63,870 nt of DNA, filler included, from Octopus bimaculoides (GCF_001194135.2; 7 parts of 7 records of this genome joined end to end with filler, not necessarily neighbours in it); one strand, 5' to 3'. Positions 58,222 through 63,870 are shown, counted from the whole stretch's first letter. Numbers and translations: made by a program. The notes: a model not told the origin generated them from the sequence alone.

Positions 58222-58400
58222 GTTTAGCATTTAAATATATATGAGCATGTTTAGATACGCATATCTGTACATACATAGATGCATACCAACAATGATTCCT
58301 TGTTGATGTTGTTGAAATTCCAATGAAGGGACCTTGGATCTAGGTTAGAAACCGGGTCCTTCTTTATTGGCAAGAAATCTTGAAATAAGCTGAATAATGA
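58222..58400 (+). mobile_element. 3'UTR copy of the CATA-associated RLE LINE
   Basis: Matches 63636-63845 from the stop-codon region to ctgaataatga|catacatac. (CATA)-rich DNA lies on both sides. Confidence 0.8.
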
Positions 58401-62204: not shown

Positions 62205-62402
62205 NNNNNNNNNNNNNNNNNNNNNNNNNNNNNNNNNNNNNNNNNNNNTTAATTAATTAANNNNNNNNNNNNNNNNNNNNNNNNNNNNNNNNNNNNNNNN
62301 NNNNTATAGCAATAAGAAAATGGAGGGGAATATGTGGTACTTATCAACTTGCAGGAAGTTGATGAGTACACGCGCACATATATATATATACATATACATA
62401 TA

Positions 62403-62568
62403 TACGACGGGCTTCTTTCAGTTTCCGTCTACCAAATCCACTCACAAGGCTTTGGTCGGCCCGAGGCTATAGTAGAAGACACTTGCCCAAGGTGCCATGC
62501 AGTGGGACTGAACCCGGGACCACGTGGTTGGTAAGCAAGCTACTTACCACACAGCCACTCCTGCGCCT
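62403..62568 (-). mobile_element. SINE family B head, well preserved
   Basis: Reverse complement is aggcgcaggagtggctgtgtggtaag..ggttcagtcccactgc..gtagacggaaactgaaagaagcccgtcgta, followed by (TA)n. Confidence 0.85.
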
Positions 62569-62659
62569 CTATATATATATTTATATATAAAATAGCTCTA
62601 TGCATATATACACACACACGTTCATACATACATACATATATTCATTCATTCATAGATAC

Positions 62660-62800
62660 AGAGAAATTTACAGAAAGACCTAGAAACAGTCGGTTTCTCG
62701 AAGAAAGAGGAAAAGAAACTGATGCAGGTTCTTCAAATCCAATCTGTAAATGACATCGAAGATTTGTAAGATATTCGAAAGTTGCTTCATTTGAGATTCT
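62660..62800 (+). mobile_element. Short C-terminal fragment of a related RLE LINE
   Basis: Reads LQKDLETVGFSKKEEKKLMQVLQIQSV, resembling the terminal LEKLSVSKPRMRKLIRRLQIQAI of the adjacent element. Confidence 0.45.
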
Positions 62801-62849
62801 TTACATGAATCGATGCACATATTCCATGCATCGATAGTTCAACCAACAT

Positions 62850-63845
62850 ACCAACTCAAAGACGTATTTACAAACACCGGGAACAATCTTAACTCAAAAA
62901 GCCTTGTCGCTTTGTTGGCGACCGGCATGAAGTCTCTTAGATAAAACTCAAAGAAAAAAAATCGTATACACACCTCCATACATGAAGAGAAAATATCAAC
63001 CAAATACCTAATGCACAAAAGGGTCAGAGATGCAGAAAAGCAGTAAAATGTGACAACCGATGCAGACTTTGTGGAGTTAACACCAAAGATATTACCCACA
63101 TAATAAGCAGCTGTCCGAAAATGTCATCATGGTATTATCTACCGATGAGATATGATGTTGCAGCTAGGACACTGTATTACAAGATTCCTCGAAAGGATAA
63201 CCTTGAGAACAAAGAAATAAGAACCCACAGTAAGGTAGAAGCCATAGCCACTCATAATAAAAAGGAGTACTGGTCGAATGTGCCAGTGAAAACCTCAATG
63301 AAATGCAAACGTAATAGAGCTGACATAATGATTTGGGTTAGAGAAGAGAAATTGTGTACAATTGTGGAAATCAGCTGCCCAGCGGATGTTAGCTGAAGAT
63401 CAGTGAAAAAGAGAATACCTACGCTAAACAACTGAGAAATTCGCAGTTACTCTATCCAGATTACAAGTTCGAGTTTATACCTGTAATTATTGGAGCACTG
63501 GGATATGTTACGCACTGTCTAAATACAAATCTCGAGAAATTAAGCGTCTCGAAACCAAGAATGAGAAAGCTGATTCGAAGGCTACAGATCCAAGCCATCA
63601 CTGCAGCTTCGAAAATCTGTAAAACTTTCCAGAAGTTTATCGTTTAAGTATATATGCGCATGTCTAGATATGCAACTATATGTATGAGAAGACATACAAG
63701 AAGCAAAACATTCATATCTGCAAATATACATACATACATGGAAAAATACCCGGTTGTTGATATTGAAATTCCAATGGAGACGTCTGGGACCTAGTAACCG
63801 GCTCTTTCTCTACTGGTCAGAAATATTGAAATAAAACTGAATGAC
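62850..63845 (+). mobile_element. RLE non-LTR retrotransposon 3' portion (CCHC knuckle, endonuclease, 3'UTR) ending in (CATA)n
   Basis: CRLC-x8-H-x4-C at 63061-63114; RYDVAART; NRADIMIW..TIVEISCPAD; FIPVIIGALG; stop at 63645-47. The 3'UTR runs into the tacatacata repeat. Confidence 0.85.
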
Positions 63846-63870
63846 GTACATACATACATACATACATACA

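What the first reader, a model, noticed from the sequence alone, without database searches (positions are those of the whole stretch)
62850..63870. Candidate (CATA)n-microsatellite-targeting RLE retrotransposon
Seen: an element with a CCHC knuckle (63061-63114) and a PD-(D/E)xK-type endonuclease ends ...ctgaatga|cgtacatacatac. Two independent 5'-truncated copies (13526-13627 and 58222-58400) end at the same junction (ctgaataatga|catacatac) and also have CATA-rich DNA on their 5' side. Established: RLE-clade non-LTR elements (R2, R4/Dong, NeSL) are often sequence-specific, and Dong targets TAA repeats. Inference: this family uses its endonuclease to target (CATA/TATG)n tetranucleotide repeats. 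I do not know of a described element with this specificity, but cannot verify novelty. It would be of interest as a programmable-insertion candidate.
Basis: partly seen in the sequence, partly recalled or inferred. Interest (0 to 1): 0.72.

Follow-up and report, generated by a model that had tools for sequence, protein, structure and literature searches.

The report
Dead retrotransposon copies in CATA microsatellite
Two broken, 5'-truncated copies of R2-like (restriction-like-endonuclease) LINE retrotransposons sit head to tail inside one (CATA)n microsatellite of an octopus-type genome; relatives elsewhere are flanked on both sides by tetranucleotide repeats, so the lineage really does insert into such repeats, but this behaviour is already known for this kind of element.

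Summary

The "element" is two 5'-truncated dead copies of different families, head to tail:
- Copy A (~62655-62954): last ~45 codons plus 3'UTR.
- Copy B (62967-63844): CCHC, RLE and 3'UTR, with at least 2 frameshifts and a 24-bp deletion.

A has imperfect (CATA)n on its 5' side. B lies exactly between A's 3' end and the downstream (CATA)n, bracketed by CGTA on both sides.

Full-length relatives have RT, a CCHC knuckle and a C-terminal RLE, with no APE domain and no N-terminal zinc finger. Their best matches among solved structures are R2 proteins.

Four relatives from other genomes are flanked on both sides by one tetranucleotide repeat: (CATA)n in two, (ACTT)n in two. These tracts are the only ones in 20 kb. 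One family (73-85% nt identity) occurs in both repeat types.

So insertion into microsatellites is supported. Strict CATA specificity and endonuclease-determined targeting are not shown. Microsatellite-targeting RLE elements (Dong, Togen, some HERO) and an (ACAY)n-targeting element (Waldo) are already described. This is a new member of a known kind, of moderate-to-low interest.

The parts
62603..62654 (.). 5' flank of copy A: imperfect tetranucleotide microsatellite (CATA)3.5 TATAT (TCAT)3; the perfect (CATA) tract is 62623-62638
   Evidence: TRF period 4, 14.5 copies, 74% matches; regex tract; sequence
62655..62794 (+). Copy A, ORF remnant: last ~45 codons of an RLE-LINE ORF (RNLQKDLETVGFSKKEEKKLMQVLQIQS, one frameshift, then TSKICKIFESCFI*; stop 62792-62794)
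   Evidence: tblastn: matches C-terminal residues of relatives, e.g. P0107 aa 89-120 at 53% identity; translations
62795..62954 (+). Copy A 3'UTR (160 nt), ending in ATAAAACTCAAAGA (62941-62954)
   Evidence: Length and terminal motif match copy B and relatives
62901..62926 (+). Conserved 3'UTR stem-loop GCC-UU-GUCGCU-UUGUU-GGCGAC-C-GGC of copy A; presumed RT recognition element (inference)
   Evidence: The same hairpin is the MFE fold in winA, L002 and L028. 7 of 9 pairs change on both sides across 11 sequences, 87.9% of cells paired versus 25-48% when slid, and 0/500 shuffles reach the covariation score
62955..62966 (+). A/B junction: A7T filler (62955-62962), then CGTA (62963-62966), which is repeated at B's 3' junction (possible 4-bp target-site duplication or microhomology)
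   Evidence: Sequence; alignment to octopod relatives shows that B homology starts at about 62967
62967..63647 (+). Copy B ORF remnant, read as frame 1 to ~63040, frame 0 to 63393, frame 2 from 63399 to 63647. Holds CCHC 63061-63114 and RLE motifs RADIM 63316-30, EISCP 63367-81, EKENTY 63405-22, IPVIIGALG 63477-503. Has a 24-bp deletion near 62976
63648..63844 (+). Copy B 3'UTR (197 nt), ending in ATAAAACTGAATGA (63831-63844); contains an internal (ATAC)3 at 63726-63739
63845..63870 (.). 3' flank of copy B: CGTA(CATA)5CA, running into the end of the piece; read as the remaining part of the target microsatellite that originally followed copy A
   Evidence: TRF (TACA)6 at 100%; sequence

Best explanation
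The region holds two dead, 5'-truncated copies of two different families of R2-superfamily non-LTR retrotransposons. These elements have a reverse transcriptase followed by a CCHC knuckle and a restriction-like endonuclease, and no APE domain. They are most likely what repeat annotators call LINE/Dong-R4 in cephalopods.

The two copies were inserted one after the other, in the same orientation, into a single (CATA)n microsatellite.

Shown:
- The domain identity of the remnants.
- The two-copy architecture.
- Repeats on the outer flanks, and CGTA on both sides of copy B.
- Related families in other genomes flanked on both sides by (CATA)n or (ACTT)n.
- A conserved 3'UTR hairpin and a conserved terminal AATGA-like end.

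Inferred mechanism:
- The element's protein binds the 3'UTR hairpin of its own RNA.
- The RLE nicks the bottom strand within a (TACW)n-type tetranucleotide repeat.
- Target-primed reverse transcription starts at the RNA 3' end, probably helped by pairing between repeat units carried at the RNA 3' end and the nicked repeat.
- Most copies are 5'-truncated, and 5' joining uses microhomology.
- Because every insertion recreates a repeat tract at its 3' end, later copies land next to earlier ones and give head-to-tail arrays.
For: Domain identity:
- Full-length relatives carry RVT_1 plus the C-terminal CCHC, with no APE hit and no N-terminal zinc finger.
- Their best PDB matches are R2 proteins.
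- The C-terminal profile aligns CCHC+RLE (KPD...D/E-V/I-T/S...EK..KY...GA.G) to R2 chains at E about 3e-5.

Two copies:
- One search places 62656-62751 on the C-terminal residues of relatives.
- The terminal motif ATAAAACTSAAWGA occurs at 62941 and at 63831.
- The hairpin lies in A's 3'UTR.

Target rather than tail. Both-sided flanks in relatives:
- L003: (TTAC)21 upstream, (ACTT)5 downstream.
- L022: (CATA)~50 upstream, CATACATACAT downstream.
- L023: (ACTT)~20 upstream, (ACTT)7 downstream, plus a tandem 3' fragment.
- L025: a near-full-length copy with (ACTT)n on both sides.
- L028: (GATA)n(CATA)~45 upstream and a long (CATA)n downstream.
- L002 and L016 show only the 3' side, and it is CATA-type.

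Background and orientation:
- In these 15-21 kb loci nearly all tracts of the relevant repeat lie at element junctions (the exception is one 19-bp CATA tract in L023). Octopus locus L001 has only two 12-bp CATA tracts in 20.8 kb.
- The sequence upstream of the L022 and L025 tracts is unique among the loci held, so those tracts are not obviously tails of another element.
- Orientation is constant: the sense strand reads CATA in 6 of 6 cases and ACTT in 5 of 5.

Literature: Dong-R4 LINEs are abundant and possibly active in octopus (PMC13282606, PMC8967140).
Against: - No other copy of the window's own two families could be retrieved, so genome-wide enrichment for these families is untested. The relatives are only about 40-55% identical in protein and come from unidentified ENA samples.
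- In L003 and L023 the upstream tract is the tail of a SINE. Part of the evidence is therefore 'insertion into another element's tail', which template jumping could also produce.
- Downstream tracts are usually shorter than upstream ones, which also fits a newly made tail at the edge of a tract.
- Many other relatives (L004-L015) end in AATGA without any microsatellite, so the behaviour is not general in the wider clade.
- Clade placement (R4/Dong versus HERO versus NeSL) was not tested by phylogeny.
- The roles of the RLE and of RNA-tail pairing are pure inference.
Confidence: 0.68

Rival explanations
1. (CATA)n is only an element-made 3' tail, templated or slippage-generated at each retrotransposition as in many CR1/L2-type LINEs. 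Insertion sites are essentially random. The CATA-rich DNA 5' of copy A is coincidence in a microsatellite-rich genome, and A-B adjacency is chance.
For: - All copies end in the repeat in one orientation.
- Downstream tracts are short in L003 (5 units), L022 (2.75) and L023 (7).
- The piece itself is rich in TA/CA/CATA repeats.
- B's immediate 5' flank is not CATA but copy A's end.
Against: - Upstream tracts of 20-50 units of the same repeat, in the same strand sense, directly abut the 5' ends of L003, L022, L023, L025 and L028. With one small exception in L023, the only tracts of that repeat in each locus lie at element junctions.
- One family (73-85% nt identity, with a conserved 3'UTR) has ACTT in some copies and CATA in another, so the repeat is not encoded in the element body.
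- Head-to-tail pairs occur in 3 loci: the window, L023 and L024.
Confidence: 0.12
2. The head-to-tail A-B pair, and the SINE-(TTAC)n-LINE arrangements in relatives, are single-event chimeras. The RT, having copied a truncated RNA, jumped to the 3' end of a second RNA (another LINE or a SINE with its repeat tail). The 'upstream repeat' is then a co-inserted tail, not a pre-existing target.
For: - Template jumping between RNA ends is a documented property of R2 RT (established knowledge, not tested here).
- The A-B junction is a short filler (A7T + CGTA).
- In L003 and L023 the upstream tract is preceded by 82%-identical SINE copies.
- Tandem 3' fragments occur in L023 and L024.
Against: - In L022, L025 and L028 the upstream tract is preceded by sequence that is unique among the loci held and shows no element 3' end.
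- Copy A's own 5' flank is CATA-type repeat that does not follow any same-orientation element; the nearby SINE is inverted.
- L025 is near full length, with its 5'UTR directly after the repeat.
Confidence: 0.1
3. Passive accumulation. The elements insert without sequence preference but survive preferentially in microsatellite-rich, gene-poor, low-recombination DNA, as proposed for Drosophila Waldo-A/B near CA repeats.
For: - The piece is a repeat-dense region: a SINE plus TA, CA and CATA repeats.
- The review PMC3812793 cites this explanation for Waldo-A/B.
Against: Passive accumulation does not predict any of the following:
- Junctions that fall exactly at the repeat, at base-pair precision.
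- A constant strand orientation (11 of 11).
- Tracts of the relevant repeat found almost only at the junctions within 20-kb loci.
Confidence: 0.05

Closest known systems
Dong / R4 clade (RLE non-LTR retrotransposons; Dong in Bombyx mori, DongAg in Anopheles, DongBg in the snail Biomphalaria)
   Same: - Single ORF with RT followed by CCHC and RLE, and no APE.
- Inserts into a microsatellite, (TAA)n for Dong, and is flanked by the repeat on both sides. A mollusc member is already described (PMC3812793; PMC4640811).
- 'Dong-R4' is the label repeat annotators give to abundant, possibly active octopus LINEs (PMC13282606, PMC8967140).
   Different: - The repeat here is tetranucleotide, (CATA)n or (ACTT)n, not (TAA)n.
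- Clade membership by RT phylogeny was not tested.
- The window copies lack the RT region altogether.
Togen (NeSL-related, fish) and microsatellite-specific HERO families (leech)
   Same: RLE-bearing elements with microsatellite targets: (TG)n for Togen, and 'some families' of HERO (PMC4640811).
   Different: Different repeat units and host groups; the phylogenetic relation to the lineage studied here is unknown.
Waldo (R1 clade; WaldoAg1/2, WaldoFs1)
   Same: Its target is the (ACAY)n microsatellite, which includes (ACAT)n = (CATA)n (PMC3812793, citing Kojima & Fujiwara 2003). The CATA specificity as such is therefore not unprecedented.
   Different: Waldo uses an N-terminal APE-type endonuclease. 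Full-length relatives of the window element have no APE and carry a C-terminal RLE.
R2 (28S rDNA-specific; solved structures 8GH6, 9DOU, 9NL2)
   Same: Best structural-database matches for RT, thumb, CCHC and RLE. The mechanism is presumably the same: 3'UTR RNA recognition, bottom-strand nick and TPRT.
   Different: - The flanks are microsatellites, not 28S rDNA.
- No N-terminal zinc finger was found in full-length relatives.
- Identity is low; only profile-level similarity is seen in the RLE.

Membership tests
RLE-bearing non-LTR retrotransposons (R2 supergroup: R2, R4/Dong, NeSL/Utopia, HERO, CRE) | CCHC zinc knuckle followed by a PD-(D/E)xK restriction-like endonuclease, C-terminal to the RT | tested here: met
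   CCHC at 63061-63114; RADIM / EISCP / EK..Y / GALG motifs; the profile of relatives aligns to CCHC+RLE of R2 chains 9nl3/9nl2/9dou at E about 3e-5
RLE-bearing non-LTR retrotransposons (R2 supergroup) | Reverse transcriptase upstream in the same ORF, and no APE endonuclease | tested here: met
   Met in full-length relatives only: 8 of 8 scanned carry RVT_1 with no Exo_endo_phos hit, and R2 proteins are the best PDB hits. The window copies are 5'-truncated and lack the RT region
R2 clade proper | Insertion at the conserved 28S rDNA site | tested here: not met
   Flanks are (CATA)n / (ACTT)n microsatellites; no rRNA match in Rfam
R2 clade proper | N-terminal zinc finger(s) and Myb DNA-binding domain | tested here: not met
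   No C2H2/CCHC pattern in the regions upstream of the RT (RT starts at about residue 200-545) in 11 full-length relatives, and no Pfam hit there in the 8 scanned. A divergent Myb cannot be excluded
R4/Dong clade | Placement with R4, Dong and Rex6 in an RT phylogeny | not tested
   No reference sequences for Dong, R4, HERO or NeSL were available in the tools. The label rests on the literature statement that octopus RLE LINEs are annotated Dong-R4 (PMC13282606)
R4/Dong clade | Target-specific insertion into a repetitive target (rDNA or microsatellite), with the repeat on both sides of the element | tested here: met
   Both-sided flanks in L003, L022, L023, L025 and L028. In the window, copy A has CATA-type repeat 5', and the A+B pair is followed by (CATA)n. 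Only inconclusive for the window's own families, with n=2 copies
Waldo (R1 clade, ACAY-specific) | N-terminal APE endonuclease | tested here: not met
   No APE domain in full-length relatives; an RLE is present instead

The most novel reading that the evidence does not exclude
Target choice in this lineage may not be fixed by the protein. It may instead be carried by the repeat units at the 3' end of the RNA, acquired by read-through into the flanking repeat, which pair with the nicked target. On this reading one family can propagate in (ACTT)n or in (CATA)n depending on where its parent copy sat: a heritable, RNA-guided and therefore re-programmable target preference in an RLE LINE. The hint is that L022, in (CATA)n, is 82-85% identical in nucleotides, with the same 3'UTR, to copies sitting in (ACTT)n (L003, L024). 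An alternative reading not excluded is a single protein specificity for (TACW)n.
Probability: 0.2. Interest if true: 0.65.

Novelty: new member of a known kind. Interest (0 to 1): 0.33.

Why it matters
If confirmed genome-wide, it would add a tetranucleotide, (CATA)n/(ACTT)n, target to the list of microsatellite targets of RLE-bearing LINEs. It would also help explain part of the association between LINE/SINE tails and tetranucleotide repeats in cephalopod and other marine-invertebrate genomes.

The lineage offers a compact 3'UTR hairpin with covariation as a candidate RT-recognition element. It also offers a natural contrast, one family in two different repeats, that could be used to ask whether RLE LINE targeting is guided by protein or by the RNA tail. 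That question bears on efforts to engineer R2-like systems.

The copies in this window are themselves dead and have no function.

Tried and rejected
- **Sequencing runs.** No genome-wide collection of copies or empty sites from the source species was possible.
- **Exact look-up of the window's 91-aa ORF.** Not on record.
- **O. bimaculoides locus L001 (P0004) and Logan contig L026.** Related octopod copies (77% and 72% nt), but truncated or cut before the 3' end, so uninformative for junctions.
- **Hydractinia locus L027.** A 3'-truncated fragment annotated as a gene; uninformative.
- **Viral contig scan.** No relatives.
- **Metagenome scan.** 17 loci. Most (L004-L015) end in AATGA without a microsatellite, so the trait is not general in the wider clade. 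Only L016 has (CATA)6.
- **Third homologue search with P0004.** No further octopus proteins.
- **Cluster names.** No clade label obtained.
- **Rfam.** Only sub-threshold mir-297/mir-568 hits, caused by CA/TA repeats; rejected as artefacts.
- **ARAGORN.** No tRNA in the SINE-like segment.
- **Pfam on the window read-through.** Only a weak zf-RVT hit.
- **DNA comparison of A and B.** Nothing found beyond repeats, which is why they are called different families.
- **B's 5' end as spacer.** I first read 'tatacacacctccatacatg' at B's 5' end as a CATA-like spacer. Alignment to L001/L026 shows it is element coding sequence (ITTSHLEE region) with a 24-bp deletion, so that reading was dropped.
- **Literature.** Searches found no RLE element described with (CATA)n or (ACTT)n specificity. 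Repbase Reports and several key papers are not in the searchable library, so absence is weak evidence.

Full report
**What is in the piece**

The piece (62305-63870) is repeat-dense octopod-type DNA. From left to right it holds the following features.
- A SINE-like segment at 62405-62575. It is 85% identical to a copy in Octopus bimaculoides CM046628.1 (L001 4396-4561) and is flanked by TA repeats.
- An imperfect tetranucleotide microsatellite at 62603-62660.
- About 1.2 kb of retrotransposon-derived sequence.
- A perfect CGTA(CATA)5CA that runs into the end of the piece.

**Checking the observation**

- The CCHC knuckle is exactly at 63061-63114 (C-x2-C-x8-H-x4-C).
- The same frame continues into RADIM (63316-63330) and EISCP (63367-63381).
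- After a frameshift come EKENTY and IPVIIGALG, and the ORF stops at 63645-63647.
- A 197-nt 3'UTR ends in ...ATAAAACTGAATGA at 63844.

The domain is a restriction-like endonuclease (RLE). This was tested in three ways.
- A profile of four intact relatives aligns its CCHC and its KPD / (D/E)-V/I-T/S / EK..KY / GA.G motifs to the C-terminus of solved R2 proteins (9nl3, 9nl2, 9dou) at E about 3e-5.
- Full-length relatives from the representative library (about 1070-1490 aa) carry RVT_1, then this C-terminal module, and no APE domain. I also found no N-terminal zinc-finger pattern in them.
- Their best matches among all solved structures are R2 proteins.

**The region holds two copies, not one**

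tblastn of the relatives against the piece places 62656-62751 on the last ~35 residues of the relatives' ORFs, for example P0107 aa 89-120 at 53% identity. After one frameshift the ORF ends TSKICKIFESCFI* at 62792-62794.

A 160-nt 3'UTR follows. It ends in ATAAAACTCAAAGA (62941-62954), the counterpart of B's ATAAAACTGAATGA.

The two copies are therefore:
- Copy A, about 62655-62954: a short 5'-truncated 3' fragment.
- Copy B, 62967-63844: a second 5'-truncated copy in the same orientation.

A and B share no nucleotide similarity beyond that terminal motif, so they belong to different families.

Alignment with two other octopod copies (L001, L026) shows where B's homology starts, at about 62967 in the 'ITTSHLEE' coding region. 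It also shows that B carries a 24-bp deletion there.

Both copies are dead. B has at least two frameshifts, the deletion, and P->A in the (K/R)PD motif.

**The junctions**

- Upstream of A: ...acgttCATACATACATACATatatTCATTCATTCATa.
- Between A and B: A7T, then CGTA, then B.
- After B: CGTA(CATA)5CA.

CGTA thus brackets B. If B is removed, A's end is followed by A7T-CGTA(CATA)n.

The simplest reading is two successive events. A inserted into a (CATA)n tract and kept repeat on both sides. B later inserted at the start of the tract that followed A. CGTA is then either a 4-bp duplication or microhomology; B's first bases, TACACAC, also resemble the repeat.

**Is the repeat a target or only a tail?**

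The exact look-up of the window ORF also found nothing. I therefore used relatives whose contigs could be fetched.

| Locus | Sample | 5' flank | 3' flank |
|---|---|---|---|
| L003 | ERZ25042219 | (TTAC)21 | (ACTT)5 |
| L023 | ERZ25042219 | about 20 (ACTT) units | 7 units, then a second tandem 3' fragment in the same repeat |
| L025 (near full length) | ERZ25878469 | (ACTT)n-type tract | (ACTT)n-type tract |
| L022 | ERZ25067903 | about 50 (CATA) units | CATACATACAT |
| L028 | ERZ25067561 | (GATA)n(CATA)~45 | long (CATA)n |
| L002 (closest protein to the window) | ERZ14208698 | not visible | (CATA)2(CAGA)n |
| L016 | JGI Ga0115011 | not visible | (CATA)6 |

Three further points bear on the question.
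- In the 15-21 kb loci, nearly all tracts of the relevant repeat lie at element junctions (one 19-bp CATA tract in L023 does not). The 20.8-kb O. bimaculoides locus has only two 12-bp CATA tracts.
- The sense strand always reads CATA (6 of 6) or ACTT (5 of 5).
- The sequences upstream of the L022 and L025 tracts are unique among the loci held.

Together these argue against a pure 'element-made tail with random insertion' and against passive accumulation.

**Limits on the specificity claim**

L003, L022, L023 and L024 form one family. They are 73-85% identical in nucleotides over the last ~950 nt and share a 3'UTR. Yet three of them sit in (ACTT)n-type repeat and one (L022) sits in (CATA)n.

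Either the specificity is broader, since both repeats are (TACW)n, or it is not fixed by the protein.

Many more distant relatives (L004-L015) end in AATGA with no microsatellite.

In L003 and L023 the upstream tract is the tail of a SINE; the two SINE copies are 82% identical. Part of the signal is therefore insertion into other elements' tails. A template-jump chimera could mimic that, and it remains a rival for the A-B pair.

Nothing here tests whether the endonuclease itself reads the repeat.

**A conserved RNA element**

About 30-50 nt before the 3' end, copy A and the relatives share a stem-loop followed by CCGG. In A it is 62901-62926: GCC-UU-GUCGCU-UUGUU-GGCGAC-C-GGC.
- 7 of 9 pairs show changes on both sides.
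- 87.9% of cells are paired, against 25-48% when the partner is slid.
- No shuffle out of 500 reaches the observed covariation score.
- The hairpin is recovered independently as the MFE fold in three sequences.

One caveat applies: I derived the structure from these same sequences. By analogy with R2's 3'UTR recognition, it is the likely RT binding site; this is inference. Copy B does not keep this hairpin in recognisable form.

**Comparison with what is known**

- RLE-bearing clades are mostly target-specific, and microsatellites are among their targets. Examples are Dong at (TAA)n, including a snail member, Togen at (TG)n, and some HERO families (PMC4640811; PMC3812793).
- (ACAY)n, which includes ACAT = CATA, is the described target of Waldo, an APE-type R1-clade element (PMC3812793).
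- Dong-R4 LINEs are reported as abundant and possibly active in octopus (PMC13282606, PMC8967140).
- I found no description of an RLE element specific for (CATA)n or (ACTT)n in the searchable library. Repbase Reports are not covered by that library.
- Membership in the RLE supergroup is met.
- Membership in the R2 clade proper is not met: the target is wrong and no N-terminal zinc finger was found.
- R4/Dong membership is plausible but untested, because no reference sequences were available for a phylogeny.

**Verdict**

This is a new member of a known kind, and the copies in the window are dead. Interest is moderate to low.

The most interesting reading that remains open is RNA-tail-guided, heritable target choice. 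It is suggested by one family occupying two different repeats.

Noticed in passing
window 62405-62575 (minus strand): SINE-like, tRNA-derived-looking repeat, 85% identical to L001 4396-4561 in Octopus bimaculoides CM046628.1. It is flanked by (TA)n/(TATG)-type repeats. ARAGORN calls no tRNA in it.
   Followed up: partly
window 62901-62926; L002 ~907-936; L028 ~11496-11521; L003, L022, L023, L024, L025, L021 in alignment A3 columns 103-128: Conserved 3'UTR stem-loop followed by CCGG, with compensatory changes in 7 of 9 pairs. It is a candidate RT-recognition element of this LINE lineage. Copy B does not keep it.
   Followed up: yes
L003 9548-9808 and L023 7908-8166: Two 82%-identical SINE copies, each ending in a long (TTAC)n tail, with a 5'-truncated LINE of the (ACTT)n family inserted directly after the tail at different truncation points. 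This suggests a SINE/LINE partnership or tail homing.
   Followed up: partly
L023 9981-10071; L024 ~10715-10900: Additional short 3'-terminal LINE fragments in tandem, separated from the main copy by a few repeat units. This is the same head-to-tail pattern as copies A and B in the window.
   Followed up: partly
window 63726-63739: Internal (ATAC)3 inside copy B's 3'UTR. The 3'UTR of B is CATA/TATG-rich in general.
   Followed up: no
L001 9600-9900 and 10001-10837: The O. bimaculoides gene model LOC106878562 (P0004) is a retrotransposon ORF fragment truncated at both ends. It lies just downstream of C2H2 zinc-finger-like repeats and is probably a TE fragment annotated as a gene. The Hydractinia model LOC130624072 (L027) looks similar.
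   Followed up: no
L021 11202-11410: Compound microsatellite after the LINE end: (ACTT)14, then (GACC)n, then (GACT)n. L002 likewise switches from (CATA)2 to (CAGA)n, and L028 from (GATA)n to (CATA)n. The tetranucleotide tracts at these junctions mutate between related units.
   Followed up: no
window 62574-62641, 62371-62406, 63647-63743 (minus strand): Sub-threshold Rfam hits to mir-297 and mir-568 (35 bits or less, against gathering scores of 75-90). They fall on CA/TA/CATA repeats and are low-complexity artefacts.
   Followed up: yes
literature (PMC3812793 versus PMC4640811): The 2013 review lists Dong among 'APE-type' microsatellite-targeting elements, whereas Dong belongs to the RLE-encoding R4 clade according to Kojima & Jurka 2015. 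This is an inconsistency in the literature to keep in mind when citing.
   Followed up: no
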